Assembly (NCBI GenBank): GCA_965202585.1
Contig: OZ241826.1
Span: 91,822,001 to 91,886,000 of the forward strand
Direction: 5' to 3'
Source: Thalia democratica
Lineage: Eukaryota
DNA length: 64,000 bases
In this document: positions 27,396-61,110 of the stretch, piece by piece
Layout of the letters: the number at the start of each line of letters is the position of its first letter
Numbering within the stretch: the first letter of the stretch is position 1
The notes under the pieces: generated by a model
What the model was told of the DNA's origin: nothing
The model's database searches: none
The model's input: only the letters and a program-made list of their open reading frames with translations
Made by a program: the position numbers and the translations under genes

Positions 27396-27822
27396 TCACA
27401 AACTCGACGAAGCGTTCGTCTGACTTCTTGCTTCTGCGGTTCTGCTAATTGGCGTTGTGTGCGACTGAACTGACATCCTCTGCAGGGAAATCCCCTTGTT
27501 AGTGCCAAAAAATCCCGCCTTAATCCTCTTCAACGACCGCTTGAAGTCTTGGTCGCGGCTCTGGTATATGAAGAAGTTCCAGAAGGAATTGTAGAAAAGG
27601 ACCACGTTGGCCGCGTGGGAAAACCCCTTGAACAGGCCGTAGTTGGACTGGCTGAAGTTGCTCAGGTCGGCAGTGTCGAGGGAAGGGTCGAAGATGAAAA
27701 GCATGTTGGAGATGATCATGAGGATGATGGTGGAAGTGAACGCGGATATCATTATGAGAAGCGTCTTGGCCACCCTGACTTCGGTGCGGGCCGATCTCGA
27801 CACATTGTTTGACTTCATTTCC
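27396..27822 (-). CDS. Class A (rhodopsin-like) GPCR, exon 4 (TM6, TM7, tail)
   Basis: VAKTLLIMISAFTSTIILMII (TM6), ANVVLFYNSFWNFFIY (TM7, NPxxY variant). Acceptor AACAACAG, stop at 27396. Confidence 0.88.
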
Positions 27823-28069
27823 CTGTTGTTTATATATTTTAGATTGTCTATCAAATTTAATTTTATTTTGTATTAGAACTTTATTTTAATTTCTTTAATA
27901 GTTATTTTTTATTAAAGTAACTAGTAAACTTGACAAGGTAATTTTTACTAAGTTTAAACAGTTAAAAAGTATTTTTTTACTACTTGATTATTTTCAAAGG
28001 ACACCATTATAATCAAAACTATCTACATTCAAGTCACTTATACTATAAAGTACCTGTAGTAACACTCAC

Positions 28070-28708
28070 CTGTTGTGAAAGTACAGGACCACCAGCACCA
28101 CCAAGCTGTTGACCAGCATCAGGCCCAACGAGACGAAGTTGGTCACTAGGGTGTGCACCCGAGCCGTCTTCTCATCAACGAGCATGAAGTAGGGACTGGT
28201 GATCACGGACGCCTTCGAGCTGAGTACCCCGGCCACGAGGTTGCAAGTTGAAATAACCCACACAAGGACGCAAGCAGTCATTGTGACGTAACACTTGCTG
28301 CTTTTGACGTAGCGCGCCGGGAAGAGGGTGGCGAAGAGGCGGTCGAAGCTGGCGGCGATCAGCGTGAATATGGACACCAGGAACGACAACCAGCTGACGA
28401 AGCCGGTGAAAATCAGGAAACTATCCACTTCTTCCAAGGTCAACGCGGTCTGGTCGTCGAGCGAGAAATTTTCTCCGCTGGCGGTAGCTCTTTTGTTCAG
28501 TCTTTCCGTTGCAAAGTAAATGGCAGGAATGAAAGCAAACACGCCCAGCATAAGATCGGCAACAGCTAGGTTGATTCTGTAAAGATGTTGTGGAGTTTTC
28601 ATTTTAGGGTTTTTCCCAAATATGTACAATGCAATGGAGTTGAGAGTAATTATTGCAAGAGCAGATACAAAGTGAAAAAAATGCAGGAAGTAAGTGCTGC
28701 CCGTGCAT
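28070..28708 (-). CDS. Class A GPCR, exon 3 (TM1-TM5)
   Basis: NSIALYIF (TM1), NLAVADLMLG (TM2), AASFDRLFA (TM3, DRY variant DRL), VLVWVIS (TM4 Trp), TM5. Acceptor ATTACAG, donor GTGAGT, 639 nt with consistent phases. Confidence 0.9.
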
Positions 28709-32740: not shown

Positions 32741-33810
32741 GGTTCGTGTTTGATAAACAATTTTGACTGTGAATTTGTTTAGGTTATGTAACAGTTGTAG
32801 TGCACATCTGAGCTACGAATTAAAAACAATACAAATAGTAAGTTGCTTTGAGACATTAAAAGCCGGGTACGTTATAAACAGTTTTCATTAATGTAAAAGC
32901 TATAATCATACATAAAAAGTTAGTTTATACCATAAAATTTAGTTTCAAAATTGAGAAGGCAAAACTAAATCAATTTACGTACTTGTTACTTGAAAATTTT
33001 TTGAAAAACTTGTCCAAAATTTATTATTTAATGTCTATAAAGAATATTACTTCATTTATTAATTTGAAAAAAATTGTAAACTATTGAAAAAGCTAACAAC
33101 ATGTGTAAGGAAAAACACATTTTAATAAAACAAAACACATTAAAATAAGTTTATTAATAAATAAATAATTTACCTTTTAGTTAAAAGTATTGAAAACTTA
33201 AAAAATTATTGATGATGAAAATATAAAATAAAAAGCTAACTCTTAACACATTAAAAAAGTACAACTTCTATATTTGGTGTTACTTATTATAAAGTTTAAA
33301 AACTTAAACTGTTATGAGAAAACAAACTATTATTTGAAGGATTGAATTAAAACTTTAAAGCTTAACCTTCAAAGTTAGTTTAAGTATGTAAATGTTTAAA
33401 ATAACAAGTTTTGTTAAGTTATTTTAAACTTTAGACAACCACAACAGTTGATAACAATGCAAAACCTTAAAGAACTTTAAAATACAAAGCAAAAAGAAAT
33501 TTGAAAGTCCTAAGTAGGCACACTTGTTTACTGTTATATAAACACTTTCTAATTAGAAATATAACTTGGGTGTCAAATTTTTATTTGAGTATTTAGATGT
33601 TTAAATATAGTTCTACTTAATTCTATTTGGTACTAAAAATAGGTTTAGTATTTCCGGCTTGGCTGCCTCGGATAAAACTTTAGCTGCAATTTGATAAATG
33701 AGGTCGTTAAAATTTCAAATAAAGCGGTAAACCAACACACTTAAGTTTATAATTATAATTTTAATTAACAGCACAAGCTACAATGCGAGCGCACCACCCA
33801 CAGTCAATTA

Positions 33811-34090
33811 TCAATCAAGCAACGCTCAACACCGTCTTTATGATGTCACACTTGTTATCAGCTGGCTTCTGTTGCTAAGCGCGTGCCTTATGTCGTTAGG
33901 CACGAAAAAGATGCAGTTTTAAAGGCAATCAGAGATAAAAATTGACATTTGTGCATGTTGCAAATTGAAATCAAATCGATGGAAATATCAAAATCAACTC
34001 CATGAACGCATTGTGGGAAGACGGCATGTTTTTTATTGCCGACGTGTTTATATAAATACCCTTCCCATCAGTTTCGACACCATAAAGTCT
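33811..34090. promoter_or_regulatory. Candidate enhancer, partly duplicated at 46054-46158
   Basis: TGATGTCACACT, TGTTATCAGCT and AAGCGCGTGCCTTATGT are shared with the second copy. Su(H)/RBPJ-type TGTGGGAA at 34012. Confidence 0.45.
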
Positions 34091-35705: not shown

Positions 35706-36030
35706 TTTGCGTTATGGATTAAATCACCGTAAAGTTTTATAGCTGTCCAAAAAAAGACAGTTTCTTGTTCGAGACTGGAAAACAGTTTCACGTCGAAAGT
35801 TCACAAAATATACGCGAAATTTACGAAATCATCATTTTTACAGCCCAACACAATTTGCTCGCCATTAAACGCTTTTCAATTTTATGGAATTGAAGATTTG
35901 TTGACGGTCGGTGGCTGCTTTTACTACTACAGCCATTATTAATATGAAAGCGTATAAAATTTTACGGCCTGGTACAAAAACATAACTCGCTTGTGTTGTG
36001 AGCAGTCAGTGTTGTGTATCACTTTCTTTT
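35706..36030. promoter_or_regulatory. Candidate enhancer, weakly duplicated at 47310-47430
   Basis: GC-richer island. TTTGCGTTATGGATTA and GTCGAAAGTTCAC have collinear matches downstream. TTTTACGG at 35960. Confidence 0.35.
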
Positions 36031-38585
36031 TATTTTTTGTTGGCAAATAAATACAGTCAAAAGCTTAGTTTTAAGATTTAAAGTTGAAGTTCTTTTCATT
36101 AAAATCTTCAGGTAGATATATGTATATATACTTTATTACTTGTTAGTTTTTGTTTAAAAGCTTTTCAATGATTGTATAAATATGCTTTTCAAGTTTTGAA
36201 TCTAAAAAATGATTAAAAATCTAAAAGTTCAAACTTTTTACAAAACTTTTAAATTGAACCAACTGTCGATAAAAGTAATATTTTTCTTTGTTATGTATCT
36301 TAATTTTTTTAAACAAACCTGCTAGCTTTAAATTTTTAGAAATTTTTCACCAGCTTCAGAAACTTTAGTTTTTTAACTTTCTATTAAAGAAACTAAAAAG
36401 TTTTTAAATATAAAATTAATACAGTTATATTAACCTTAAAACTATAGAACTATACATAATTAATTTTAACTCTATTAAAACTATTAGTTGTATGATTATA
36501 TATTTAAAATAATATTTATAAGTTCCTTTATAAAACATTTAAAAACTCAGGCTTTAGTTCATTTGTGTAACTTAGCAACGAAATTGTAAACAATTATCTT
36601 TGTAAATGAACAGGTTCATATTTTTTTTCCTATTCCTGAGATATTATAATAATTTTAAAGTTAACATCCGCTAAATTTGATGAAATTTAATACAAGTGTC
36701 TTAAGTACGACTATTTACGAATATAAAAGTAAAAGCAGTGTCGTATGAATTAAAAAATGTTAACAAAACATGCCGACGATTTATAGCTTTGAAACTTTTA
36801 AGTTCTAATCGTCGTTCATATTGGCTATTTTTAACAATTGGAAAATAAAGTTTTAATTTATTTGCAATCATTAACTTTTATTAGTAGCAATTTCTTTTAA
36901 TACAAAGTATCCATTACAGTGAAAGCTATCACCGGAAAAGTATTTATTTTAAGACGAGCTATTACGTTGCACAAATTTAAAAGTTCTAATCAAACTATAA
37001 TGTAAATTTTCATTAGGCTGGTTTAATGGTATTTTCCTTGAATAAATGTTAATGAAGATTAATCGTACACTAATACGATAATCTTTTTTTATCAAAAATT
37101 TTATACAAAACTTAAACTATTATTTCAATACATCCGTTTTTTAAGTTATTTTTACACTTAGAAATAATTCTCAAAGGTTTCTTCTTATTATTTTTTCAAA
37201 AGTTATTTATTGCAAAATTGCTAGCAATATAAACTTCGGTAATTTGAATACAAATATTTTTTTTGTTTAAACTCAATTTAGTTGTTCTGAGACATATTTA
37301 TTATTCTTTTTTTCATGCTCTTTGATCAAAATCTATTCAGCAGTTTACAATCTTGTAGAAGTTGACTTGAAAAACAGTATGTACAACTTTAATTAATAAC
37401 TGTTCAATTAGTCAAACTAAAAATATTAATTTACGCGAAGCATACTATCATAAATTTTAAGAATTGTTAACTACTGCTTAAATAATTTTGTCTTTTTGTA
37501 GCTATAAGTTTTTATTGCTTCGTTATACTTTTCAGCTGTTAATTGTTTTACAGTTTAATTAATCAAGCTACTTTTTTTGTTCAGTACAGTTGCTTTAATT
37601 TTAGATAAGTATGAATTAGAAACCAAAAAGTGTATTAAAAGTACTGAAAATAGAACACAATGTTATATCAGGTTTTTTTAAGAAATCAAAAGAACTATTT
37701 TTTAACAAACTTTGTGTAAATACATAATGCAAAAAGGTTTAAACATTTTTTAAACGTTTTTTAACGTTCAAAAATAGTTTATAAAAAAGTTTAAGTCAAA
37801 AAGTTCTACTTGGCTGTAGCTGTTTTTTGGTAATGATATGAAAAGATTGTTTTAAAAGATCGAGATAAACTTCAAACTATTGAAAAATTGTAAAGTTAAA
37901 CCGGACAAGTATAAGTAACGATATATTACAGACTTGCAACAATATAGTATTTACAACTTTCAACACAGTTGAGCTATTCAGCTTACACTTTACACTTAAA
38001 CATTTATAATGCGATTTAAGATGTAATTTTTTTAAATTTTTTTTCATCTTTCAACAATAAACAATTATAAATCAAGCCTAAGAAAATTTAGTTCTTTGTT
38101 TCAAAACAATTAAATCTAAATTAAAAAGTAAGGGACAGCTTGTATGTTACCATTTAAATTTTATTAGAAATCAAAAGAAACAGGAACTACATTAAGCTTT
38201 ATTAATAAAATAAATTCAACAATTAAATAAAGTAGCTAATTTTTTGTCAGGTAAGGTTTAGAGTTTGTTTAAAAAATAAAATTGCTAATGTTGTTTTATA
38301 TCTTATGTTTATTTTTATTGTTTAAGTAGTAGCTTTGTTGCGTATTTGAAATAAGTGCTTTGTTTTATCTTTGAGTTTTGTTTTTTTTACTTTATTTAAA
38401 ATTTTAAACCTTGTTTCAATTTATACTTTATATATTTGAAAAATAATGTTAATTCCTTATGTTTACTGTTTAGATAAAACGTTGAATTTAGGTGTTTTTG
38501 GGAAAAGTTGTAGGTACATAAAAGTTTTTTTTTTGTTTTGAAAATTGATATGAATTTGTACCTTATGCAAATGTTTTAATTTTAA

Positions 38586-38935
38586 AAAATGGCGTGTTGA
38601 ATTACGGCCTAAACAAATTATTGATCACTTTTGTAAAAGTCGTAAAACTTTTATATTCAACATTCAACACTTTCAATGTTTGCGTTGGACAATTGAAAGC
38701 TTGTGCAAACTGTACGTAGCTGTTAATGATGGCAAATATCATTAAGATATCACTTTATTAATTTTAATGAGGCTCCTACATGTCTGACGCTAAAAGTTTT
38801 ACTGCTTTTCTGATGGATAACGTTCATCAATCGCTTATTCGTGGTTTCGGTTTAAACCCTGGGTGACCCATGTAACAATGTTTGCCAGCTATTTAATTCT
38901 TAAGGTAATTTACACCTTGGGAATTTGTTGTCGTT
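38586..38935. promoter_or_regulatory. Candidate Evx enhancer, near-identical copy at 49431-49760
   Basis: Core 38663-38901 vs 49501-49739 has 7 differences in 239 nt by manual alignment. No ORF. Contains GTCGTAAAA and a TTAATGAT..ATCATTAA inverted pair. Confidence 0.6.
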
Positions 38936-42037: not shown

Positions 42038-42265
42038 CAACCGCAGAACAGTTCAAAGTACCCAAGTGCCGCCCGGCAGATGTCGCCCACCACGCTGCAG
42101 AACCAGCACAACATGAGCCTGGCCAACATGAAGCGGTACAGGACGGCGTTCAGCAGGGAGCAGATCAGGTGCTTGGAGGAGGAGTACCAGCGGGAGAACT
42201 ACGTGTCGCGGCCGAGGAGGTGCGAATTGGCGGGACAACTCAGCCTGCCCGAGTCAACCATAAAG
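42038..42265 (+). CDS. Evx: Evx exon 2 (homeodomain helices 1-2)
   Basis: [58 protein letters not shown] is diagnostic of Evx/eve. Intron at IK|VWFQN. Confidence 0.95.
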
Positions 42266-42970
42266 GTTGTTAATGCGGGTTATTATTATTTTTAAAGAGC
42301 AGTAATTAATTAATCAGACCTTATAGTTTGAATTGTTAGATTTTGACTGATAAACGTAGTAATTTGAAGCTGACCCGGGTCCACTATAAAGGTTTGACTT
42401 GAATATTATAAATTAAACTTGTGATAATTTAGTATGCACAATGAATATTTTATAACATAATCAATAAAGTTTAATTGCATCATATATCAGTTGAAAAGGT
42501 TTTAATTCGATGTTGTATTTGTTTTGATAAGTTCGTGCTGAAATGGACCATTTGCTAAATATATTACAGCTTTAAGAAAAATTAGTACAGTCCAAACCCA
42601 AAATGTAAGTTTTGGCTTGGCCGTGTATTTATAAAATATACGCTTATCATAAATTGAAACTTGTTAGAACTTCACATACAAAAGTAGTACTTAATGACTA
42701 GTATTTTTGTATCTAGTTGTTTTATTATCTTTATCGTAAAAAATCAATAGAATTCGTGTATAATGTTAAAATAAAGCTAAAACAAGACTCTTATTATACA
42801 AACACTTATTATAATTCAATCAAAAAAAGCAATACTTTTAGTAAAAATACCAGAAATAAACTGCTTGCCTGTCAATAAAAGATTACTTTCTAAGTGAAAG
42901 GTGTATGCTATAATACTTAATATAACTTAATATACTACGGCGATTTTTTTACAACAAAATAAACTGTCAG

Positions 42971-43181
42971 GTCTGGTTTCAAAACCGTCGCATGAAGGAC
43001 AAGAGGCAGCGTCAGAGGTGGCCGTTTTCCCTGTTCAACCAGGAAGACCCGGTCATGTGCGCGTTCATGCTCTCCCACTTTACCAACATGCTCTACCACC
43101 AGAGGCAACAGCGAACGGTAAACTTTTCCAACCAGGCGATGCCCATGCACCAGGCGCTACCGATGTTGAGTCAGCACAAAG
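42971..43181 (+). CDS. Evx: Evx exon 3 (homeodomain helix 3)
   Basis: VWFQNRRMKDKRQRQRWPFSL... Acceptor CTGTCAG, donor GTCAGT, phase 1. Confidence 0.93.
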
Positions 43182-43701
43182 GTCAGTTTGTTGCTGTTGT
43201 TAGCGGAATTTTAGCTTGGTATAAATTTATACAACCTAAGTAGATTTGTAATAAACTTCTCACTAATACGAGAGTTTCTAATAAATAGGAACACCGAATT
43301 AATAAATCTTAAACAACTACTACTTTTTCTATAATTTTTTTGTTGTGTAAAAGAGACCAAAGCAAAGTATTATATGTACGCAGATGTTTTTTATTAGTTC
43401 AGATAAAGTATGTATTTAGTTTTAGGGTACTCCAAAATATTTGTAAAAATAAAAAAACATTTATACTCATAATATAGTAATTTCTTTTTAAAGCGATGTT
43501 ACATTGAAAGCAATAGCAAGAAACATAAATATTAATTACATACACAAACTATTTTAATTAGTCTTAAAAACAGCTTATTTTTTTAATTTTTTAAGTAAAT
43601 AAAAACAAAGCATTAAGGAAACGGAATCTAAATAACTTCGCTCATATCACGAGTAATAATATAACCTCACAAAAACTGTAAACTGTGTTATTTTTTTACA
43701 G

Positions 43702-44072
43702 CTCAGTGCAGCAAAACTTCTGAGGAATCGATCAAAGAACTCCAAGACGAGCTGAAACCAGCGACCAATCAGCTGTCGTCTTCCAGCTCGTCTCCGAGCA
43801 TTGTGACGTCACCGAGCCTGGAACCAATCAGCGCGCAGAAAACGTCACCGGTCGTCCAACCGAAAGTCCTCATGCGGCCCAGCCTCGCTCAACCGTTCGG
43901 CGTCGGTTATCCGTTCTTCCAGCCTTCGATGTTTAACTCCCCTGCTATGTACCACGGAAGGTTCGGTTTGGGTGAAACCCCTTTTCTGAGGGAGAACGTC
44001 GCGCAGCAGAATAATGCGAAACTGCTGCAGTCCGCCTTCGCCGCTAGGAACGGTTCAGGCGGAAGCTTTTAA
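43702..44072 (+). CDS. Evx: Evx exon 4 (terminal, Ser/Pro-rich)
   Basis: Acceptor TTTTTACAG, in frame to stop 44072. Total CDS 1119 nt = 372 aa. Confidence 0.8.
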
Positions 44073-46053: not shown

Positions 46054-49000
46054 CAGTCAACAATTAATCAACTAAATTTTCGTCTTAAATTGACTTAATG
46101 ACGTCACACTGCCATGTTATCAGCTTGTACTGTTGCGCATTAAGCGTGTGCCTTATGTAGGCTCAACATGCATGAAAGTTGTCAATACTGTGACAGCAGA
46201 AAGATTAAAGTTTCTTAAACTGCATTTTGATTAACATAAACAAAGAAAAAAACTCAATAAAATTTCAGTGTACTGAGTTCAAACTCTTGGAATATTTTGT
46301 TTAAGTATCAAAGTAAAGATTGAATCAAAAAACTTAAAAGCAAAAACTAGTTATTTTACTTTGTTATGAAAAAAACTCATAGTAAAATCTAGCTAATATG
46401 TATTAAAAGACTTTAGTAACCTATACATTATATGTTTAGTTCATAGATTAGGTGTTTTAGATTTAATCTTTGTTTAGCAAGTTGTCGTAATTTAAAATCA
46501 TACTGAAATCTTTTTAGTCAATAATTTTTTTTTGCCATAGCAGCTTCTAATTGAGTCAGTAATATTCTAAATGTCATAATATTTATCGTTTTCAAACATT
46601 TTTTCTTTAGATTTTGTTTACCATACTACTTTTTTTTTTAAATACCTTTTCAAAGAACGGTTGGGTTTGGCATACCATATATTTGACTCTATGCTTTTAA
46701 ATTTTTATGAAGTTGAAAACTAAAAATTTCTGCTTTAACGACATTAATGGAATTATAAAAGATATAAAGTCTTTTTTTGAATAGCCAAAACTGTTTTGTA
46801 TGCAGTCGACTAAAACTAATTTCGCATTTGGTTTTTGTAAGTTTAAATATCATAAAAACTGGCAGGATTATGTTAGACTAATTGTTGTTTAATTGGATTG
46901 TATGTTTGTTGTTATTGATGTTTTTTTTTGTTTTTTAATTGAACAAACATTTTAGAAAATAGAATTTTCAAATACCGTGTTGAATATACTTTTAATGTTA
47001 AGTTATACGGCTGTAGTAGACATTATGTTTCCACTGCACTAAGCTTTTCTTAAAAAAAAAGTTAACTTAGTTTCCTATTTAAAAAGTTGAGTTTTGTGAA
47101 AAAATAAGTTAATCTAAGTTGATCGTTATACAACTAAAAATACAAATAAACCTTTATCTTTAAATATTAGCGGCTTCTTAAGCTAAAGTAATTTTTAACA
47201 AATGACTTCTAAATAATTTTTCAATTAAAAATAAAAGTTGTTCTAAAGTTTACTTTAAAGTAGCTTAAATTTTTTAAAATTAATTTGACTTAAAGACAGT
47301 AAGCTTGAGTTTGCATCGTGGATTATATTGCTATTAAATTTTACTGCTTTTATAAGAAATAGTAGCTTTAAATTCACTCTGCATTAAATTTTTCTTGCAG
47401 TCAAAAGTTCACGAAGACATACAAAACATGAGAAAATTTTAGTGAATAAAATTCTGAGTTTTATAACTAAAAATATTTCTCTCGTTATTTAACGACTAAA
47501 AAATTCATTAAATTGAATATTTATCATCGCAAATTTGGTTTCTAGCTTTTAATACTTCCATCATTAAATAATAACGTATCAACTTTTATCCGTGTTTTTT
47601 TAACAGTATTGGTTGTAAAGTTTCTTTGTTGCAACAAAATTATTAGTAGCGATCGTTTAAGTATTCACGTTTTCTTTAAGTTTTAATTTCCAAGCTGCAA
47701 CTTGTTTGGTATGAAAATAAAAAGTTTCTTCACTTAAAATTAAAAGTCACAGTTTTTATTCAATTAGTTTCAGAGGGTAAGATAATCATATAAAATTTGT
47801 GCAAATAATATTAAACCAGTAATATTTATATAACAACTATTTTTGAGTTGTTTTTAGTGCTTAAATATTTACAATTTTCTTTTATAATGAAACTAAGCTA
47901 TTAAGTACATTATTCAAATTAGAAACTTTGTAGCATATAAAAAAATAGTTTGTTATTATTTTCAGTTTTTTAGCTATAACTTAAGTTATAACTTTTGTAT
48001 GCGGTAAATAAAAACATATTTTAATAGCTTTTTTATTTAAGAACTACCAGCTTTCTTGTACCTAGTTATTTTGATTATGTTTGAAACCCTGGATTATTAG
48101 TAAAGCTGAAGATAATATAGTTTATTGCGATGTAATGCTAAAAAATACTTATAACAGCAATCAATCTTAAAATATAACATAGAAGCATAATGTTTGAGCC
48201 TGTAAAAAATATATTATTTATTAAAGTTAGTTTTAAACAGCGAAACTATGAACTAAAACGTTTTTGAAAAAGTTTATTTTTACAATTTCATTACAAATTA
48301 AAGTTACTTATACGCTTGTACGAAAATTTTGTTTGCTAAATATACACCTTTGCTTAAACCAGGTTAAGTAACTTAGTATAAATTTTTGTACTTTATAGTT
48401 TTATGTATGTTGTTTTTTTTTTGTAATTTATTTAGCTAAGTAAAAAAGAAATACATCGATAAAATGTTAACTAATAATTTGATTTCAAAAACTAAGTTTA
48501 CTTAATTTCTATAGTTAAACCTAAGTTTTACACAAACAGTTCAAAGTTTTTATTGACCACATTGACTATAATGAACGTAAATGTAAAATTAGACTAGCTT
48601 TTTTTTAAATTCCTTATTGGTATGATTTTTATAAACTGTATTCTACTTTGTTTTATTTTTAGCCAGCTAAAACCTAAAAAGTTACTTAGTAGGTTTGTTC
48701 AATATTTAGTAGACATGATTTAAAATTACATTTTAGAAAGTCAAGCTAATGTTTGAATTAACTTTAGTTGGAAAGTAAGTTGTTAAAAGCTAAAACATTA
48801 AATAAGAATCAATTTTGTGAGAAGTTATTTTTATAGGTCTTAGTACTTCATTTACTTTTTGAACGCTTAAATAGGTTTTTCTTAAAAATAAGTGGTTTGT
48901 AATCATCAGTAGTTTATTTGATTTTATAGAACAAAATACTTGACTGACTGTAGTAATAATCATTATCGTTTCTAGAAAAATAAACCTACCGAACATTTAA

Positions 49001-51150
49001 AATCAAAGATTTACAAGGAACACGTCTGTTCAATACTAAGTACTTATGCTATATATCTGACAAGTTCTCATACTTGTAAAAAGTTACTTAGAAAGTATAT
49101 TCAATGTTTAGAAAGTATTAATAGAATCAAATATCAGTAAATCAAGCTAAGTTGTTAAAATCTTGAAATTAAATAAGAATAAATTTTGTCAGAAGTTATT
49201 TTTATGTACCTAAGTGGTAGATTTAAAATAATTTGTAGTTAATAGTAGTTTGTTTGATTTTGGAGAACAAAATACTTGTACTGACTGCAGTAATAACCAT
49301 TGTCATTTCTAGAAAAATAAATCTACCGAACATTTTTAAATGAAATCTTTACAAGGAACTTGTCTGTTCAACACTATCTACTTTTGCTATATATCTGACA
49401 AGTTCCCATAGTTTGTTTTATTTTCGAAACAAAATGGCGTATTTAGTTACAACAGGAACAAATTATTAATCACCTTCACATAAGTCGTAAAACCTTTACA
49501 TTCAACACTTTCAATGTTTGCGTTGGACAATTGAAAGCTTGTGCAAACTGTACGTAGCTATTAATGATGGCAAATATCATTAAAATATCACTTTATTAAT
49601 TTTAATGAGGCTCCTACATGTCTGCCACTAAAAGTTTTACTGCTTTTCTGATGGATAACGTTCATCAATCGCTTATTCGCGGTTTCGGTTTAAACCCTGG
49701 GTGACCCATGTAACAATGTTTGCCAACTGTTTAATTCTTTGTTTATATCTTGTGAATTGGTTGTCGTTGAGTTGACATTTTTTTTTTCATTCCCTAAAGC
49801 TCTTATCTTTATCTTTAATTTAACTGCTCTCTTGTTTTTGCTATTGTTGTGGTTTTTGTTGTTGTTGGAGATATCTTTGAACAGGATCCTCTATCAACTG
49901 AGAATAGAATTAATAATGATCGTTTTTGTTAAGATTGATAAATTAAGGAGATTTTATAACAATAATAGAATCGTATTATTATCGAAAAATCGTTTTTCGT
50001 TTATCAATTTAAGAAATTGTTATAAAGTACTTACTTAAAAACTTTTAAAGTTTTACATAAATAAACCGAAAATTTTTGTATCAACTAAAATAATTCATAA
50101 ATTTTAATGTTTTTTTTGTATCTAAATATCTGTAGTTTAAATAATTTTATAATAGCAAGTGAACTTTTATTTTAGATAATTTTTATTCAATTTTTTATAC
50201 TGTTAATTTTCACATAGTTTGAGAAACCGTTAATTTTTAAAATACTAAAAACAAAAAGTTTAATAGTTTTATATTTATCAAAATGGTTTAAAAAAAAAAG
50301 TATAATTATTCAAAATATCTAAAACAAATTTTATGTTTAAGAAAACTCGTATATTTTATTATTCAACTTATTATAACGAGGTTTAATTATCAAAAGAGAA
50401 ATTTTTAATAAAGTATACTTAAGTGAAAATGGAACATTGATAAAAAAAAATTGTTTTTAAAGGCGATAATAGCGTTTAAAACTTCGTTTTTGAAATTACA
50501 TCAAATCCATTCGAAATTTTTTTTTTCTTGGCGATTACTTGAAAATATTTTATGAGCTTCAAATATATAAAACACAAGTTTGTTTTAGTAACTTTAGAAA
50601 CTTCAGAATAAAGCTTATATACTACTACAAATATTTATTTCAGATTAAATTTTCTTTATATTAATTAAATAATCTATTATTAGATTGCTTTAATACTATT
50701 ATATTACTTATTTACTTATTTACTACTAATAATACTTATATGAACTTTACATTAAACATTTTTTAAAGTTTTAAAGACCTGACGTTCAGGATAAATTAAA
50801 AAAAAGTTTTTAAAAATTTTTAAGTAAATTATATGATTTTAAATAATTATAAAGGTTAACTTTCAAGTTAAAACTTTAAACTTTTTTAGTAAAATAGTAA
50901 CACAAATGCACACTAGTGATTAATTGTAATTTTAATATTTTATCAAACACTTAAAATTGTTACGTTTGAAAACTGCTTATATAAAAAGTTATAACATAAC
51001 CTGTAAAGCTGGCTCTTTTAAATTTATTTGTTTATTCATCGTGAATGACGTACGTACAGTGTAGACTTTAAAGTCGCTGTTTGTTTAATTTAATTCTTAC
51101 TCAAGCTTCAAGTGTGAAAAAAAATTGCAACAAAAAGGTATGAAATTAAG
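46054..51150 (+). repeat. Direct, diverged duplicate of the Evx upstream region (33.8-40.3 kb)
   Basis: Four collinear matches: 33811-33893/46054-46158, 35706-35820/47310-47430, 38586-38935/49431-49760, 40221-40330/51046-51150. Confidence 0.75.
48801..49410. repeat. Tandem duplication of a ~250-bp unit (48801-49073, 49171-49410)
   Basis: Shared GAACAAAATACTTG..CTGACTG, TTTCTAGAAAAATAAA.CTACCGAACATT and GCTATATATCTGACAAGTTC. Confidence 0.8.
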
Positions 51151-51387
51151 TGTTTAAAATTTATGTTTAACCTAAGTATTGGTTTAAGGTACAACATTCT
51201 AAGTTACTAAATTTTATTTGATAGTCCACATTTTCAACCAACAAATCTAATTTATACATTATTTTGATATTCTGGTTTAAAACATTTTGTTGTTATAAAT
51301 AAAATAAATAATAAAGAAAATAAAAAATTCTTCAGAATTAGATTTTTAAATAGTCAAAGTAAGTCCTATGTTTTTTTTTAACTTGAG

Positions 51388-51521
51388 TCCGTGATCACCA
51401 GTCCCTACTTCATGCTTGTGGACGACAAGACGGCTCGGGTGCACACCCTAGTGACCAACTTCGTGTCGTTGGGTCTCATGTGCGTCAACAGCTTAGTGGT
51501 GCTTCAAGTCTTTCACAATAG
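51388..51521 (+). CDS. 5'-truncated duplicate GPCR, first remaining exon (TM5); functional status uncertain
   Basis: SVITSPYFMLVDDKTARVHTLVTNFVSLGLMCVNSLVVLQVFHNR matches the end of GPCR exon 3 with a 6-nt in-frame deletion. Donor GTGAGT kept. In-frame ATG at 51412. Confidence 0.55.
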
Positions 51522-51794
51522 GTGAGTGTGCCTTGTACAATTACTATATAGTATAACTAACTTTAGTTTGATAGTTTTGGTTGTAATGGTGTCGTTTGAA
51601 GACAGCTTGAAAATAATCGAGCAAAAAAAAAACATAAAAAAAATTGTTTATTTAATTAGTGGAAAAATACCTTTCTTGTTTACTATTTACTCTTTGACAA
51701 AGTAAAACTAATCAAAAAACTTATAACTTTAATAAAGTAGTAAAACCAAATGTAGTTAACTGTAGCATACAAATCTAACATACATGAACAACAG

Positions 51795-52212
51795 GGAAAT
51801 GAAGTCAAACAACGTGTCGAGATCGGCCCGCACCGAAGTCAGGGTGGCCAAGATGCTTCTCATAATGATATCCGCCTTCACCTCCACCATCATCCTCATG
51901 ATCATCTCCAACATGCTTTTCATCTTCGACCCTTCGCTCGACACCGCCGACCTGAGCAACTTCAGCCAGTCCAACTACGGCCTGTTTAAGGGGTTTTCCC
52001 ACGCGGCCAACGTGGTCCTTTTCTACAATTCCTTCTGGAACTTCTTCATATACCAGAGCCGGGACCAAGACTTCAAGCGGTCGTTGAAGGCGGGATTGTT
52101 TGGCACTAACAAGGGGATTTCCCTGCAGAGGATGTCGGTTCAGTCGCACACAACGCCAATGAGCAGGACCGCAGAAGCAAGAAGTCAGACAAACGCTTCG
52201 TCGAGTTTGTGA
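51795..52212 (+). CDS. 5'-truncated duplicate GPCR, terminal exon (TM6-TM7, tail); functional status uncertain
   Basis: Paralogous to 27396-27822 with 10 synonymous and 3 non-synonymous differences and a 9-nt in-frame deletion. Acceptor and stop kept. Confidence 0.65.
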
Positions 52213-53100
52213 ACTTTTAAAGTTTTTTACTGAATAAGAATTGTTCAACAGCTGATAATCTCTTATAGTTTGCTATAGGACTGAAACGTTGTGTTGTCTT
52301 TAGTAATCTGCAAAAATAGAATTTAATTCGTTTCTTTATAGCTACATGAGTTGAGAACTTTCTGTTGCCAATCTAAAGCAGTTTCAAATATAAGTTTTTT
52401 TTTTACTTATAACGTGTTAAATACTATTGATAAACTATGCCCTTTTTTAAAAATAAGTTGGTTCAGTTTTTTTTTTTTGAGGTTTAACTTTAATACTTGT
52501 GTGTTCAAATTAACATTCAAGTTATAGTAGTTTCAAAATATTTTTTAAGTTCTTTAAAAATTTAAAAACTTGTTAAGCTTATTAATATTATGGTACCATA
52601 AAAATTTGAATATAACACTTGTTGCTTGTGTTTAGCAAAATTATACTAAGAAGTTCTAATTATTTTCGTTAGTTTTTTATTTCAAACTAGTTTTTCATGA
52701 CATTAAACACTTTCGGGTTTTTTAAAAATACAAATAAATTTAGTTTCTGTCACTTAAGTCCTTCTATAACACATAAAAGCGTTTTGTTAGGGCCTGAACT
52801 ATCTTAAATAAAAACATTGTGACTTAAGTAATTTTAAACTTAGTTTCGAATATCTTAATCAAGTGGTTAGTAAGATATTCGACATAAAACCTTATCCTTG
52901 TCAAGAAACAGAAATTTTATTCTATTTAATTCACATAAATTTTATCTAGTTAGCAAACTTATTTCTGATGTAAATTTTAATTACATTTGGTTTAGCGGGC
53001 TGATATTCATGTTTGCAGTTATACCTTTCGCGCGCTAAACTCCATTTAAACTTTGCAAAGATTGGCGGTTCAGTAATATTCTGAGGGACTAATATCCGGC

Positions 53101-54239: not shown

Positions 54240-55300
54240 TCAAAAACTTGCTGTTGTAATTAACCAAAGAAATTTCAACGAATTAAAAGTTATGCTTGAT
54301 CCCGTTCGTCCGCAACATTATACAGTCTAAAAGTATCACTTAACACTTGCCTGCAACAACTAATGAATAACAATTGTCCTCAACATTAAGAATCTAAAAC
54401 TATCATTCCACAGTATATCGCAACAATACAACTATCACATCACAGTAGACCACAACAATACAATTAGCACATCACAGTAAATCGCGATAATACAACTATC
54501 ATATCACAGTAGACCCCAACAATACAATTAGCACATCACTATAGATTGCAACAATACAACTGTCACATCACAGTAGATTGTAAGAATACAACTATCACAC
54601 CACAGTAGACCCCAACAATACAATTAGCACATCACTATAGATTGCAACAATACAACTGTCGCATCACAGTAGATTGTAAGAATACAACTATCACATCACA
54701 GTAGATCGCAAGTGTACAACTATCACATCACAGTAGATTGCAATGTTACAACTATCACATCACAGTAGATCACAAGTGTACAACTATCACATCACAGTAG
54801 ATTGCAATGTTACAACTATCACATCACAGTAGATTCCAAAAATACAAGTATTACATCACAGGAGTTTTATAATTTACACTGGTTACAAAGCAACCAACTC
54901 CTGCTTTGACTTTACTAGTAGGCTATTGGTGTGCGGTGGGCTTAATAAAAGCGATGAATGCTGTAATAATGTTATGAAAATAAAATCAGTTGTATCATAT
55001 AACTAAGAACGCAGTAACTGGTCATCAATACCAAACATGAAAGAAGCCGAAGCTTTTACAGTATGGTTGTTGTCAAAATCAAGATGTTTGTAATCGGGGT
55101 CGGTTGCAATAACAGTGAAGTTTTTGATAACAATAACAGTAAATATGTTTATTTTTATTTGTTCGAAGTACCCAGAACTTTTTTGTTCCATCGAAACCGC
55201 CTTGTATGACAGTAAATAGATTGTTGTTGGTAAGAAAAGTTCCATGGCTTTCTGTTTTGACACGAAAGAAAAACGGTGAAAATTTTTATTTGAATTTGTC
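54240..55300 (+). pseudogene. Second kelch-repeat pseudogene, interrupted by a minisatellite-bearing insertion
   Basis: Across frames: RNFNELKVMLDP/RSSA (~54270-54325), then after the array SCFDFTSRLLVCGG, NWSSIPNM, FYSMVVVKIKMFVIG, SEVFDNNNSKYVYF, AFCFDTKE. Homologous to 24050-24450. Confidence 0.65.
54398..54862 (+). repeat. 32-bp minisatellite array 1 (~14 units)
   Basis: Unit CAACTATCACATCACAGTAGATTGCAACAATA and variants. Confidence 0.92.
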
Positions 55301-55693
55301 AGATGTTTTTTTTTTCATACGTTAGCTTACTTATATTTAAGTTTTTAGTGTGTTTTTTTAAGTTTAATTTATAAGTCCAAAAGAAGACCTTCAAAACTAT
55401 TCTATTCGTGCTTCCGATTCAATAGCGATTAATTTGATTTAAGTAACTTTTACCATTTATTTTAATAGATTTACTTTTGTGCAGAAATTTGTTTTAATGC
55501 ACCATGAAAGTGTAGTCAAAATTGTTTGTTTTTAAATTTAACATTTAAGAATTATTAGAATTTAAAATATGTAGTTTATTACTTTGGTGTTTTAAACAAA
55601 TATTATAAAAACAAGTTTGTTTTTTGTCTCTTTTGTTTACATTTTATCTTTTTGGCTTTTTTTTTATTAGGGTAATAACGTCAATTTATTTAA

Positions 55694-56040
55694 TGTGATT
55701 TGATAGTTGTATTATTGCGATCTACTGTGATGCAATAGTTGTATTGTTTGCTGTCTACTGTGATGTGATAGTTGTACTGTTGAGATCTACTGTGATGTGA
55801 TAGTTGTATCGTTGCTATCTACTGTGAAGTGATAGTTGTACATATCGCTGTCTACTGTGATGTGATAGTTGTACTCTTGAGATCTACTGTGATGTGATAG
55901 TTGTATTGTTGCTATCTACTGTGATGTGATAGTTGTAATATTGCTATCTATTGTGATGTGATAGTTGTACATATCGCTGTCTACTGTGATGTGATAGTTG
56001 TACTGTTGAGATCTACTGTGATGTGATAGTTGTATCGTTG
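55694..56040 (-). repeat. 32-bp minisatellite array 2 (~10 units, inverted)
   Basis: Reverse-complement units TCTACTGTGATGTGATAGTTGTA... Followed by a ~300-bp tail (56041-56348) homologous to 59006-59328. Confidence 0.92.
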
Positions 56041-56859
56041 AGGTCACAATTTAAAAATTTTATAATTTTCACTCAATTTTCTGGAGTTAATGGTGAATGG
56101 CAAAAAAAAAGGTCTTAGGTTTTTTCAATGGTAGTTTTGAAATATTTTTACAGATATTATAGGAAAGTTCAGAAATTTAGGGTGCCATAAGTTTTAAACG
56201 GGGAGCCACAAGGACATAATTTGTAACTTCCACTAGATATTTTCGAGTTGATAATGAAGAGAAAAAAATCTTAGGCATATTTAATGGTAGTTTTCTGAGA
56301 AATCTTGTCAGAAGGGGCCATACCTTTTTTATTCTTCTAAAGGGAACCTGTTGAAAAAGAAGTAAGGGAAACTCTGTTCTAAGTACTTGACAAATATTAA
56401 TGAAAGGATTTAGTAAAAGTTTAAACGATTTGTTTCATTATTAATTGCCAGTTATTAGAGGTGCAGTTTTTTGGTTACATAATTATACAAATAACTACAC
56501 TTCAAGTTTTTTACTAATACTTTTAGGGAGCCACATTTCTGAAGACAAGTTAAACTAGAAAATCTTTGTAATGATCATGTAGGTTTAATTCTTAAATATA
56601 TGATAAAAAAAATTAACATACTCATTATACTAAAACTGTCTACGTTTTAGTAAGTTTTAAAACTTTTTTTAGTCATACAAAAAAAAAAATAATTCTTTTT
56701 TTGATAAGAAACATTAATGTAGGTCTAATTAAAAACATTTAGACGGCAAAGTTATAATTTAACAATAGAGAAAGTTAAAAATAAGAAAATATTTTAATAC
56801 TAAATTGAATTATTTCCACCCTGGAAATTACACATGACTAAACTTACTTGCTTGATTTT

Positions 56860-57290: not shown

Positions 57291-57910
57291 TTAAAATTTT
57301 CTATTGCAAAAAGAAATAGTTGATAATTTTATGTATTCCCAAACTTTTTCTGCTAAAATTTTACTCGAAGACTATATGTTTTTCTAACAATCTCCTAAAT
57401 AAAATTTAACAATACTAATTGATATATTGCAAAAAGTTAAACTAAACACATTTATTATCGACCAACCGTGGTTTTTTAATACAATACAAAAATCTAATTC
57501 TAATGAAATTTAATTTTATTTTCTAAACTTTTTTCATTAAGTCTTTAACATATAACAACTTGCTGTATGATCAAAACCTAAAACTTACATTTTGAAAATT
57601 TTGCACAGGCCTATAAAAAATCCAAATATCTCGCCTAGTACATTTCTTGAGTACTATTGGGCTAACTGGTGATGACTAAATAATACCGTCACTAATAAAA
57701 ATCAACCAACGGTTGCAAATAAAAGGTCGTTTTTTAAAAGAGAGTACTTAGCTTAACAAACATAAAAAAAAAGCTAATATAAATTACGAGAAAGCAATTC
57801 ATTTATTATTATTTTACCACTAGTTACCGATTTCTGCTTACAAATTTATATGTTATAACATACATATCACTGATTAAATATATTCTAATTTCTAAATTTC
57901 AGAAATGATA

Positions 57911-58222
57911 TAACTATCACATCATAGTAGACTGCAACATTGCAACTACCACATCACAGTAGACTGCAACAATACAACTATCACATCACAGTAGACTGCA
58001 ATGGTACAACTATCACATCAAAGTAGACTGCAATGGTACAACTATCACATCACAGTAGACTGCAATGGTACAACTATCACATCACAGTAGACTGCAACAA
58101 TACAACTATCACATCACAGTAGACTGCAATGGTACAACTATCACATCACAGTAGACTGCAATGGTACAAGTATCACATCACAATAGACTGCAACTTTACA
58201 ACTATCACATCACAGTTAATTG
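57911..58222 (+). repeat. 32-bp minisatellite array 3 (~9-10 units)
   Basis: Unit CAACTATCACATCACAGTAGACTGCAATGGTA, very homogeneous. Confidence 0.92.
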
Positions 58223-59334: not shown

Positions 59335-61110
59335 ATTAAGAGAGTTATCACTTTTAAAAAGGTAGTCAAAGTGTTTCAATAATAGCCTGAATAATCTGGT
59401 GTATTTGTAAAAAAAAATTACAAACCAAAAACTAAAGAAAAATATTTAGTTAAATAAGTTTAGATGCCGAAAGTTGTCGTAATGAAATAAAGGAGTTAAT
59501 ATATAGCTAGAATCAAAAAAGATCACCTTCAAGAATAAATTTCATATTAATAATTGTTAGCCTAAAGTTCAAATAAAAAAAATTCCAAACTAGTCAAGTT
59601 TTAGGAAAGAACTTTATACGAACCTTAGTAAGCCTGAGTTTTTCAAAAAAGTTCAAACAAGACTATGTGTTTGACAGTTCTGCAGTAATAGATTCAAGTC
59701 TACCTTTTCAGTATATTTCATGATTAGAGACTTTTATTAATATTAAAGAGATAATCTTTAATGAAATCAAGTTCAGTTGAAATATTAAATGGAGAAATTA
59801 AATTTGTAATTATTTAAAATTATAAAGGTTACTTTATAATAATAAATAAAGTATTACACGGAAGAAAATTGTTAGAAACTAGCTTATATTAAATTTTATA
59901 ATGCTAAATAAACACATAATTTTACCTGTAAGTATGTATGACAGCAAATTTAAGCTGTATTTATTACTGAAATGTGGTATTAATGTTTTTCAAAAGTGTC
60001 ATATAAAAACAAATTTTAGCGTAATGTTTATTATTGTTATTTAAAAACTGTTACTATATTTTTTTTCAAATAAAACATTGTCCTTTTGAATTTTAAACCT
60101 GCAATTTAAGTTTTATCGGAGTTATTATGAGAAAATTATTTTTTTTTTCCAAAACTTAGTTGGAATAACTAATTATTCATGTGATTCAAAATTAAATAAA
60201 TTATCTAAACAAGAATGGTTATTTAAAGATAGTAAAAACTTAAAAATAACATTTTCTATATTAGGTCTTTAAGTGGATGCTCCCAGTGAATAGTTTCATC
60301 AGACTTCAAATCAATAAGAATGTTACAAAATGTTTTAAATGTGAATACTAAAAAATTTAAAATGGGCAAATTATTAATATGGTCAATATTAGAAAATGCA
60401 AAACAAATTACCAGATATAAATTTGAACTAAATGAACTACATGTTTTTTATTCATTCAATTTAGATTTAATAATCTGATACATAAAAGTCTATTTTGCAA
60501 TTTAAAACTAAATACAAATTAAATTACCAATCTGCACTACTGACCTTTATAATTATTATTATCACGCTTTATTACCTATGTCAAAAGTTTATAAACTTTA
60601 CACTCATACTTAAAGTTACAATTATTGTTTTAGAAATTTTACACAAATTAATACTTGCAGCGTACCAATGACTTTAACTACCAAGGTCAAATCACGCAAA
60701 CAACCGGCAGAAACTTATCCTACAAACCGGCAGGTCCTTTATTTAAAAATGCCACCGCAACGACCATGACGGAATACTACAAACATTTACTTCTCTGTCT
60801 CACCGTCAACCCTCGGCCGCTCTGACATCCGTACCCCAAGCACTCTCCTTCTCCACCTAAATGCACCCGTAGCACCGCAAACACAAAACCATCATGCAAA
60901 GGGTTTTCCCCTCCATCAAGAGCGCACACTATTGGCGCTCCCGAGTCGTCCACTGCCGCCTGCATCCGGCATATTACAAGTGTCGCATCCGTAGCAGAAC
61001 TGCAAACTTTTATCGAAAATTGAAGCGTTGTTGTGAGCGTAGAGGCCGCATTTTTCTCCTTTCAAAAGACTCTTTCCTGCCTCGCTTCATTCTGCTCGTT
61101 TTTTCCAAAT
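59335..61110 (-). repeat. Inverted duplicate of 17400-19310
   Basis: Continuous non-coding homology, for example an exact ATTTTGTAACATTCTTATTGATTTGAAGTCTGATGA at ~18250 and ~60297-60332 (reverse complement), and 18800-19310 vs 59335-59830. Confidence 0.85.
60737..61110 (-). pseudogene. Second trypsin-like serine protease pseudogene (3' half only)
   Basis: EKCGLYAHN...LQFCYGCDTCNMPDA then frameshift to DDSGAPIVCALDGG...FVFAV. Nucleotide homology to 17410-17760. Confidence 0.75.

What the first reader, a model, noticed from the sequence alone, without database searches (positions are those of the whole stretch)
46054..52212. Duplicated Evx regulatory landscape fused to the 3' half of a GPCR: candidate promoter-capture chimeric gene
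Seen: four non-coding islands upstream of Evx (33.8, 35.7, 38.6, 40.3 kb) recur in the same order and orientation at 46.1, 47.3, 49.4 and 51.1 kb. No second Evx follows. About 240 bp after the last island, GPCR TM5-TM7 sequence starts abruptly at 51388. The junction reads TTTTTTTTTAACTTGAG|TCCGTG, an acceptor-like site 24 nt before an in-frame ATG (51412), within the 17-38 nt spacing seen for the other genes here. Inference: a copy of the Evx enhancers/promoter may drive a 175-aa three-TM receptor fragment in an Evx-like pattern. Caveats: a GAG acceptor is uncommon, and the fourth island match is short.
Basis: partly seen in the sequence, partly recalled or inferred. Interest (0 to 1): 0.8.

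Follow-up and report, generated by a model that had tools for sequence, protein, structure and literature searches.

The report
Old truncated receptor copy beside Evx
A half-copy of a neighbouring receptor gene, left at the end of an old inverted duplication next to copied Evx control elements, is shared with a related marine species and kept parent-like by gene conversion; nothing shows that Evx elements switch it on.

Summary
The structure is largely real; the promoter-capture reading is not supported.

- **Islands:** Three of the four islands recur in order and orientation downstream of Evx. I3 is strong (364 nt, 88%; 242-nt core 97%; only two copies in the 801-Mb genome). I1 is clear and I2 marginal. 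The fourth island, the one said to sit 240 bp before the fragment, is at chance level.
- **GPCR fragment:** The piece at 51387-52746 is an intron-containing, 5'-truncated copy of the receptor gene at 26.4-29.4 kb on the minus strand. Its breakpoint lies inside exon 2.
- **Inverted duplication:** The fragment is probably the inner end of an inverted segmental duplication of at least 10.7 kb (17.5-28.2 kb against 60.9-51.4 kb) that brackets Evx.
- **Age:** A marine-metagenome contig from a related species carries the same truncated copy with the same upstream flank, so the junction is old and not an assembly error.
- **Gene conversion:** Exon 3 groups by species at 46 of 46 informative sites, while the flank and mid-intron mark orthology. 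Exon-limited gene conversion therefore keeps the copy parent-like.
- **Selection:** The remaining parent-copy differences give dN/dS of about 0.1, and both indels are in frame. Some protein-level constraint is possible.
- **Against promoter capture:** No Evx promoter copy is detectable. The GAG acceptor is not conserved in the orthologue. The one RNA-like run shows only the parent's spliced mRNA.

The same two features were also noted separately on this window (s1-317383, s1-317428).

The parts
51387..51521 (+). Exon 2' of the truncated GPCR copy (end of extracellular loop 2 plus TM5). Homology to the parent starts at 51387, which matches parent 28210 inside parent exon 2. The first in-frame ATG is at 51412. 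There is a 6-nt in-frame deletion and V>Q in TM5.
51522..51794 (+). Retained intron of the copy (GT..AG), 73% identical to the parent intron. Its presence rules out a retrocopy.
51795..52212 (+). Exon 3' of the copy (TM6, TM7, C-tail, stop). It is 96.9% identical to the parent, with a 9-nt in-frame deletion. Pfam 7tm_1 matches profile positions 191-260 below threshold (16.3 bits against a 30.5-bit cutoff).
52213..52746 (+). 3' flank co-duplicated with the gene; identity to parent 27395-26425 falls from 83% to 71-74%. The stretch about 52207-52400 belongs to a dispersed repeat with at least 40 genomic matches.
51242..51295 (.). Upstream flank of the copy, 87% identical to nt 17-69 of marine-metagenome contig L022. 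It is the only match to that flank in the 801-Mb genome and marks L022 as the orthologue of the truncated copy.
49414..49768 (+). I3', the copy of Evx-upstream island I3. The core 49498-49739 is 97% identical and the shoulders about 76-79%. Its edges are sharp.
47400..47588 (+). I2', a weak copy of island I2 (34.3 bits against a null maximum of 31.7).
46054..46172 (+). I1', the copy of island I1 (68 bits). It contains a TGACGTCA-type motif.
38572..38935 (+). I3, a non-coding island 2.2 kb upstream of the Evx ATG. It is rich in TAAT motifs. No Rfam family matches and RNA folding is not significant.
35792..35964 (+). I2, upstream island.
33801..33915 (+). I1, upstream island.
27396..28708 (-). 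Parent GPCR exon 2 (28708-28070, TM1-TM5; Pfam 7tm_1 at 45.6 bits), intron, and exon 3 (27822-27396). A further ectodomain exon lies at about 29402-28955. The exon 2-exon 3 splice is seen in a contig of the RNA-like run X5.
42080..44069 (+). Evx gene. The homeobox is split at 42265 / 42971, the last coding exon ends at 44069, and the first coding exon starts near 41185. Evx lies between the two island sets and between the two inverted arms.
59409..60930 (-). Outer block of the right inverted arm, 73-85% identical to 17567-19234 (a trypsin-like gene and its flank). It is collinear with the GPCR block: the spacing between blocks is 6.7 kb here and 7.2 kb in the left arm.

Best explanation
The stretch 46-52.7 kb is the inner junction of an old, complex segmental duplication around Evx.

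**What is shown**
1. An inverted duplication of at least 10.7 kb (left arm 17.5-28.2 kb, right arm 60.9-51.4 kb) ends inside exon 2 of a rhodopsin-type GPCR. This leaves a 5'-truncated, intron-containing copy with TM5-TM7 and the tail.
2. Three non-coding islands from upstream of Evx are present again, in direct orientation, downstream of Evx. They end 1.6 kb before the fragment.
3. The truncated copy predates a speciation, because a related marine species carries it with the same upstream flank.
4. Its exons, exon 3 above all, are repeatedly overwritten by gene conversion with the parent. The mid-intron and flanks evolve independently.

**What is inferred**
- Gene conversion is the main reason the frame and splice sites are intact.
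- Some direct purifying selection probably acts as well. I give about even odds that the fragment is, or recently was, an expressed TM5-TM7 mini-protein rather than a conversion-maintained relic.
- The duplicated islands, I3 above all, are most simply constrained cis-regulatory elements that act on Evx from both sides, like a duplicated shadow-enhancer set. They are less likely to be a captured promoter for the fragment.
For: **Structure**
- Inverted homology blocks are collinear and of similar neutral identity, about 73-74%.
- The breakpoint lies inside parent exon 2, and TM1-4, exon 1 and any Evx remnant are absent downstream of Evx.
- Islands I1, I2 and I3 score 68, 34 and 330 bits, against a null maximum of 31.7.

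**Age and orthology**
- Nt 17-69 of L022 hit only window 51242-51295 in the whole genome.
- In L022 the first GPCR-like segment after the flank begins within a few nt of the same parent position.
- Three mid-intron sites and two indels are shared between the copy and L022.

**Gene conversion**
- Exon 3 informative sites: 46 group by species, 0 by orthology. Paralogues within a species are 97-98% identical, against 84-86% between species.
- Synonymous divergence is uneven: exon 3 dS 0.12 against exon 2' 0.45 and intron K 0.33 (Fisher P=0.005 and 0.002).

**Constraint**
- Pairwise omega is 0.10 (8.2 nonsynonymous and 20.8 synonymous differences). Under a neutral copy the nonsynonymous share would be about 0.63 (P about 1e-4).
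- Only two indels occur, both in frame, against about 14 expected at the intron rate (P about 8e-5).
- Polarised with related-species proteins, the copy carries no more derived replacements in exon 3 than the parent: T>M and the 9-nt deletion in the copy, L>F and M>I in the parent.

**I3**
- It has two copies only, 7 differences in the 242-nt core against 27% in the intron (P=7e-15), no RNA family and no conserved ORF.
Against: - No RNA evidence for the fragment. The single RNA-like run (X5, low depth) shows only the parent's spliced junction.
- The fragment lacks TM1-4 and a signal sequence. Its ATG context is poor, and its own derived changes hit TM5 (2-residue deletion, V>Q) and a Thr near the start of TM6 that every aligned relative keeps.
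- Whole-intron identities are star-like (0.68-0.73 for all pairs), so the claim that duplication came before speciation rests on the flank, a few intron sites and two indels.
- L022 and L023 are short metagenome contigs from different samples, so it is assumed, not shown, that they are paralogues in one species.
- The single-event nature of the inverted duplication is inferred from two blocks. The 7 kb between them does not align.
- Whether the 97% identity of the I3 core reflects constraint or gene conversion cannot be settled without an outgroup.
Confidence: 0.7

Rival explanations
1. Enhancer or promoter capture. The duplicated Evx islands drive transcription of the fragment. The transcript is trans-spliced at the GAG acceptor at 51387 and translated from ATG 51412 into a 175-aa three-TM protein in an Evx-like pattern.
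For: - I1'-I3' lie 1.6-5.3 kb upstream of the fragment on the same strand.
- The frame and splice sites are intact, and omega is about 0.1.
- The junction follows a T9 tract, and no in-frame stop lies between 51388 and the ATG.
- Earlier notes on this genome report spliced-leader remnants; I did not test this.
Against: - No copy of the Evx promoter-proximal DNA is detectable, and island 4 is at chance level.
- The acceptor-like site is not conserved in the orthologue L022.
- GAG is a poor acceptor.
- X5 shows parent mRNA only.
- The islands are equally well placed to act on Evx itself, 2 kb from its 3' end.
Confidence: 0.1
2. Pure relic. The fragment is a non-functional partial pseudogene whose exons look healthy only because the selected parent keeps overwriting them by gene conversion. 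The second island set is likewise a passive copy kept similar by conversion.
For: - Exon 3 groups 46:0 by species.
- The high-identity zone ends within about 20 nt of the exon 3 boundaries, as expected if conversion tracts need homology.
- The truncation removes four helices.
- No copy-specific RNA contig was found.
- Gene conversion of a partial duplicate by its ancestral copy is documented for ftr-1 and fog-2 in C. elegans (PMC3449122).
Against:
- Exon 2' has near-neutral dS (0.45) but dN of only 0.054.
- Both indels are in frame.
- The copy has survived since before a speciation in at least two lineages.
Confidence: 0.35
3. Assembly artefact or chance. The junction at 51387 is a mis-join, and the islands are chance similarity in AT-rich DNA.
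For: - The contig listing from the DNA runs did not explicitly show a piece bridging 51387.
- I2 is marginal and island 4 is at chance level.
Against: - An independent metagenome contig from another species joins the same flank to GPCR sequence.
- DNA-run depth is continuous across the junction bin.
- I1 and I3 are far above all controls, and I3 has exactly two genomic copies.
Confidence: 0.03

Closest known systems
Partial (5'-truncated) gene duplicates created by segmental duplication, with gene conversion by the ancestral copy (reviewed by Katju 2012, PMC3449122; examples there include fog-2/ftr-1, Hun and SRGAP2)
   Same: - The duplication breakpoint lies inside an exon.
- The intron and 3' flank were co-duplicated.
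- The parent sits nearby.
- Recurrent conversion by the parent holds down divergence in the shared region.
   Different: - Here the 5' half is missing, so a new promoter and start would be needed.
- No recruited coding sequence was found.
- No transcript is known.
Concerted evolution of inverted paralogues by interlocus gene conversion (for example arms of palindromes and inverted segmental duplications; from general knowledge)
   Same: - Paralogues within a species are more alike (97-98%) than orthologues between species (84-86%).
- The orientation is inverted and the separation about 23 kb.
   Different: Homogenisation is limited to the GC-rich exons. The intron and flanks have escaped, so the arms as a whole are only about 73% identical.
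Shadow or redundant enhancers born by duplication (Ness, Kosztyo and Wunderlich 2026 preprint, PMC13345019: duplication signatures in 18% of fly and 34% of mouse shadow-enhancer sets)
   Same: Sequence-similar non-coding elements sit in the same locus on both sides of a developmental transcription-factor gene. The I3 core is kept at 97% in both copies.
   Different: Enhancer activity and the target gene are untested here. The similarity could be kept by conversion rather than by independent constraint.
Enhancer adoption or hijacking and promoter-capture chimeric genes
   Same: A structural rearrangement places a foreign coding fragment next to developmental regulatory DNA.
   Different: No duplicated promoter, no chimeric transcript and no expression data.
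Split or truncated GPCR fragments (TM1-5 plus TM6-7 co-expression experiments and dominant-negative truncated isoforms; from general knowledge)
   Same: The predicted product would be a TM5-TM7 fragment. Charged residues after TM5 would favour the native topology.
   Different: Those are engineered fragments or splice isoforms of a full gene, not a separately encoded fragment conserved across species.

Membership tests
Rhodopsin-family GPCR (Pfam 7tm_1) | Seven transmembrane helices; whole-protein score above the Pfam cutoff | tested here: not met
   - Fragment: only profile positions 191-260 match, 16.3 bits against a 30.5-bit cutoff.
- TM1-4 are absent downstream of Evx.
- Parent exon 2 scores 45.6 bits and passes.
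Partial gene duplicate (DNA-level) | Homology to a full-length paralogue that starts or ends inside the gene, with introns and flank co-duplicated | tested here: met
   Homology starts at parent 28210 inside exon 2. The intron (73%) and the 3' flank (83% falling to 71%) are retained.
Processed pseudogene / retrocopy | Loss of introns, poly(A) tail | tested here: not met
   The 273-nt intron is retained with GT..AG.
Concerted evolution by gene conversion | Paralogues group by species although orthology markers show the duplication came before speciation | tested here: met
   - Exon 3: 46 sites group by species, 0 by orthology.
- Orthology is shown by a flank match that is unique in the genome, plus mid-intron sites and indels.
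- Caveat: the outgroups are short metagenome contigs.
Promoter-capture chimeric gene | Duplicated promoter or 5' exon of the donor gene joined to the recipient coding sequence | tested here: not met
   No detectable homology between 38.9-41.2 kb and 49.8-51.4 kb. Island 4 is within the null range.
Promoter-capture chimeric gene | A transcript that starts in the captured region and includes the recipient exons | tested here: inconclusive
   No run is on record as RNA for the organism. The RNA-like run X5 shows only a parent-type spliced contig.
SL trans-splice acceptor at 51387 | A functional AG acceptor, expected to be conserved in orthologues and seen joined to a leader in RNA | tested here: not met
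   Orthologue L022 has ...AAAAAAAAAACGCA before its first GPCR-like segment and ...GAACGCG before the position equivalent to 51387, so there is no AG. No RNA is available.
Duplicated (shadow) enhancer pair | Two sequence-related non-coding elements in one locus | tested here: met
   I3/I3' and I1/I1' are significant. There are two genomic copies only, no RNA family and no conserved ORF.
Duplicated (shadow) enhancer pair | Both elements drive overlapping expression of the same gene | not testable with these tools
   Needs reporter assays or chromatin data.

The most novel reading that the evidence does not exclude
The 5'-truncated receptor is a real, selected gene: a separately encoded TM5-TM7 mini-protein conserved across related marine species. 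Duplicated Evx enhancers switch it on, so a developmental patterning landscape has been re-used for a receptor fragment that may modulate its full-length parent.
Probability: 0.1. Interest if true: 0.7.

Novelty: new member of a known kind. Interest (0 to 1): 0.35.

Why it matters
This is a clean natural example of three known processes acting in one 35-kb locus:
- an inverted segmental duplication that cuts a gene in half;
- exon-limited gene conversion that keeps the half-gene looking alive across a speciation;
- duplicated non-coding elements on both sides of a developmental homeobox gene.

It also carries a methodological warning for this genome. Exons that are far better conserved than their introns in partial duplicates need not mean selection on the copy; a similar case was noted elsewhere in this genome (s1-271249).

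If the fragment proved to be expressed, it would be an unusual, separately encoded GPCR fragment. If both I3 copies proved active, they would be a dated example of shadow-enhancer birth by duplication.

Tried and rejected
- **Dispersed repeat or transposon as the source of I3:** rejected. I3 has only two copies in 801 Mb. Only the GPCR 3' UTR piece at 52207-52400 is a dispersed repeat.
- **I3 as an RNA gene or coding exon:** no Rfam match at E<=1. Folding z-scores are -1.57 and +0.16. Open frames are short and not shared between the two copies.
- **Residual homology between islands, after I3' and before I1':** global alignments are no better than controls. Exact-seed and blastn scans found nothing collinear beyond the islands.
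- **Remnants of a second Evx, or of GPCR exon 1 and TM1-4, downstream of Evx:** none.
- **Retrocopy:** rejected, because the intron is retained.
- **RNA evidence:** no run is on record as RNA for the organism. Marine metatranscriptome X4 gave only 18-25-nt chance pieces.
- **Relatives of the I3 core in JGI metagenome contigs:** two exact-pattern scans found nothing.
- **More orthologues of the truncated exon 2':** the protein search found no candidates.
- **Organism from the protein atlas:** uninformative, generic 7tm_1 clusters only.
- **Complex prediction and structure prediction:** not run, because no binding claim is made.

Full report
**Setting**

The window is G000:C1:91822001-91886000 of an 801-Mb genome with about 27% GC and GC-rich exons. 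The organism is marine. Its nearest sequence relatives are contigs named 'marine.metagenome' under PRJEB4352, which I recall to be Tara Oceans. Earlier notes of this scan call it a probable pelagic tunicate with spliced-leader remnants; I did not test that.

Genes in the window:
- a NUBP-type P-loop NTPase at 8.7-12.2 kb;
- a trypsin-like gene at about 17-17.7 kb;
- a kelch-repeat ORF at 23.6-24.4 kb;
- a rhodopsin-type GPCR on the minus strand at 29.4-27.4 kb;
- Evx on the plus strand at 41.2-44.07 kb, with the homeobox split at 42265/42971;
- a GST C-terminal domain ORF (one exon) at 62.8-63.0 kb.

**The islands**

A plain self-comparison finds one strong direct repeat: 38572-38935 against 49414-49768, 88% identical. 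Its 242-nt core is 97% identical and the shoulders about 76-79%. Similarity stops sharply on both sides. The whole genome holds only these two copies, so I3 is not a dispersed repeat.

The DNA is very AT-rich, so I scored local alignments with a composition-aware matrix. I calibrated them on the reverse-complement orientation and on 24 scans of neighbouring AT-rich regions (null mean 27.8 bits, maximum 31.7 bits).

| Island | Upstream of Evx | Downstream copy | Score | Verdict |
|---|---|---|---|---|
| I1 | 33801-33915 | 46054-46172 | 68 bits | clear |
| I2 | 35792-35964 | 47400-47588 | 34.3 bits | marginal, but collinear |
| I3 | 38572-38935 | 49414-49768 | 330 bits | strong |
| I4 | about 40.3 kb | about 51.1 kb | 17.7-25 | chance level |

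The DNA between islands, before I1' and between I3' and the GPCR fragment aligns no better than controls. So three islands recur in order and orientation, but the promoter-proximal Evx DNA does not.

I3 matches no Rfam family, has no significant fold and carries no shared open frame. Read directly, its core is rich in TAAT-type motifs, as a homeodomain-responsive enhancer would be. That is inference.

**The GPCR fragment**

Window 51387-52746 (plus strand) is homologous to the reverse complement of 28210-26425. Homology begins in the middle of parent exon 2, at the codons for S-V-I-T just before TM5. It then runs through the exon end, the intron, exon 3 and about 530 bp of 3' flank.

| Segment | Identity to parent |
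|---|---|
| Exon 2' | 88% |
| Intron | 73% |
| Exon 3' | 96.9% |
| 3' flank | 83%, falling to 71% |

The retained intron excludes a retrocopy. Nothing resembling TM1-4, exon 1 or Evx lies between 44.1 and 64 kb.

**A larger inverted duplication**

The same self-comparison shows a second inverted block: 17567-19234 against 60930-59409, 73-85% identical. It is collinear with the GPCR block and similarly spaced (7.2 kb on the left, 6.7 kb on the right). This holds when 50 kb of extra flank is added.

The fragment is therefore most simply the inner end of an inverted duplication of at least 10.7 kb whose arms bracket the GPCR 5' half, both island sets and Evx. The 7 kb between the two blocks no longer aligns. 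On the right it holds 32-bp satellite arrays.

**The copy is old**

A protein search with exon 3' returned only short metagenome ORFs at 77-86% identity. I fetched four of their contigs.

Contig L022 (1097 nt) carries exon 2'-like sequence, an intron and exon 3. The evidence that it is the orthologue of the truncated copy is as follows:
- Its nt 17-69 match window 51242-51295, the DNA just upstream of the truncated copy, at 87%. This is the only match to that flank in the whole genome.
- The first GPCR-like segment that follows the flank in L022 starts within a few bases of the same parent position as our junction.
- The mid-intron of L022 shares three substitutions and two indels with our copy rather than with our parent.

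So L022 is the orthologue of the truncated copy in another species. The junction is therefore biological and predates that speciation.

L022 differs from our copy in one respect. After a degenerate, out-of-frame 'VTTSPYIN' segment it has an extra in-frame stretch from RYV through TM4. One of the two lineages has therefore remodelled the junction.

The sequence immediately before the junction is not conserved: T9-AACTTGAG here, A-rich ...CGCA there. This argues against a conserved acceptor.

**Concerted evolution**

Contig L023 has an intron and 3' flank that align better with our parent. In exon 3, our parent and copy are 97% identical, L022 and L023 are 98% identical, and between-species pairs are 84-86% identical.

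Informative sites in the four-way alignment:

| Segment | Group by species | Group by orthology | Conflict |
|---|---|---|---|
| Exon 3 | 46 | 0 | 0 |
| Intron | 5 | 3 | 0 |
| Exon 2' | 2 | 2 | 1 |

Because the flank shows that the duplication came first, exon 3 must have been homogenised within each species by gene conversion. This also explains why synonymous divergence is uneven: exon 3 dS 0.12, against 0.45 in exon 2' and K 0.33 in the intron.

Caveats: the outgroups are short contigs from different samples, and whole-intron identities are star-like at 0.68-0.73.

**Is the copy itself constrained?**

Gene conversion erases synonymous and nonsynonymous differences alike. The mix of the remaining differences is therefore still informative.
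- Nei-Gojobori counts give 8.2 nonsynonymous and 20.8 synonymous differences, omega 0.10.
- If the copy were neutral, about 63% of differences should be nonsynonymous (P about 1e-4).
- At the intron's indel rate about 14 indels are expected in 552 coding bases. Two are seen, both in frame (P about 8e-5).
- Polarised with the related-species proteins, exon 3 of the copy has one derived replacement (T>M next to TM6) and the 9-nt deletion. The parent has two derived replacements, L>F and M>I.
- GC3 has not decayed in exon 3 (0.78 in the copy, 0.74 in the parent). It has dropped in exon 2' (0.77 against 0.87).

Against function:
- The product would lack four helices.
- The copy's private changes include a 2-residue deletion and V>Q in TM5.
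- The ATG context is poor.

I put the odds of a translated, selected product near even.

**Expression**

No run is on record as RNA for the organism. Run X5 (47 M letters, kind unknown) behaves like RNA. It covers none of the intergenic 5.9 kb that was laid. Its single contig joins the parent's exon 2 end directly to exon 3 and carries parent alleles at 51854 and 51876.

That confirms the parent's splice and shows no copy-specific transcript. The depth is only 2.8 and it is one sample, so this is weak negative evidence.

The DNA runs cover the junction bin continuously. The truncated listing did not show a named bridging contig.

**Reading**

The evidence favours a different history from promoter capture. 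It is an old, complex rearrangement (an inverted duplication plus a direct duplication of short non-coding patches) that left a half-gene, which the parent keeps refreshing by gene conversion.

The duplicated islands lie 2-5.7 kb beyond the 3' end of Evx, and Evx is the only developmental regulator nearby. The simplest functional guess is that they are a redundant enhancer set for Evx. Duplication is a documented route to such sets (PMC13345019). Partial duplicates and their conversion by the ancestral copy are also well documented (PMC3449122).

This makes the locus a new member of known kinds. The open question, whether a conserved TM5-TM7 mini-protein is made, is worth a targeted RNA test.

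Noticed in passing
window 54398-54861, 55687-56042, 57904-58216, 58810-58997: Four arrays of a 32-bp satellite (unit about AACTATCACATCACAGTAGATCGCAACAATAC) in alternating orientation, inside the right inverted arm where the left arm holds a kelch-repeat ORF.
   Followed up: partly
window 52207-52400 (and parent 27190-27395): The GPCR 3' UTR or flank contains a dispersed repeat of about 150-190 bp with at least 40 matches (72-85%) on many chromosomes. The type was not determined.
   Followed up: partly
window 48773-49410: A local tandem duplication with a period of about 337 bp (86-89%) abuts the left edge of I3'. It may have displaced older sequence there.
   Followed up: no
L022:117-262: In the related species the truncated copy holds a degenerate, out-of-frame duplicate of the S-V-I-T-S-P-Y-F segment (20 of 23 nt). 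An extra in-frame RYV-TM4 stretch follows, and then the normal segment. This looks like a templated insertion or junction remodelling.
   Followed up: partly
window 17012-17652 (+) and 60780-61061 (-): A trypsin-like gene and its inverted paralogue lie in the two arms. DNA identity is 73-85%, but protein identity in one exon is only about 43%. Unlike the GPCR exons, this pair shows no sign of homogenisation.
   Followed up: partly
G000:C1:91558964-91559216 and G000:C856:32252-32506 (L006, L005): A full paralogue of the GPCR (about 58% protein identity) lies 263 kb upstream. A near-identical copy sits on a small unplaced contig and may be a haplotig.
   Followed up: partly
window 27334-27380 (minus strand): The parent's 3' UTR has a 47-nt insertion that looks like a tandem duplication (...AATAAGAACTGTTCAAC / ...AATAAGAGTTGTTCAAC). 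It is absent from the copy and from L021.
   Followed up: no
window 55045-55185 (+): A weak kelch-like remnant (40% over 47 aa against the kelch ORF at 23556-24380) lies between the satellite arrays. Its orientation is direct, not the inverted one expected from the arm.
   Followed up: no
L023:385-793 and L024: L023 has an in-frame 12-nt deletion (PSLD) and EMK>AKK at the start of exon 3. L024 shares L023's 3' flank at 100% but differs by 5% in exon 3. This points to more than two paralogues, alleles or species in the metagenomes.
   Followed up: no
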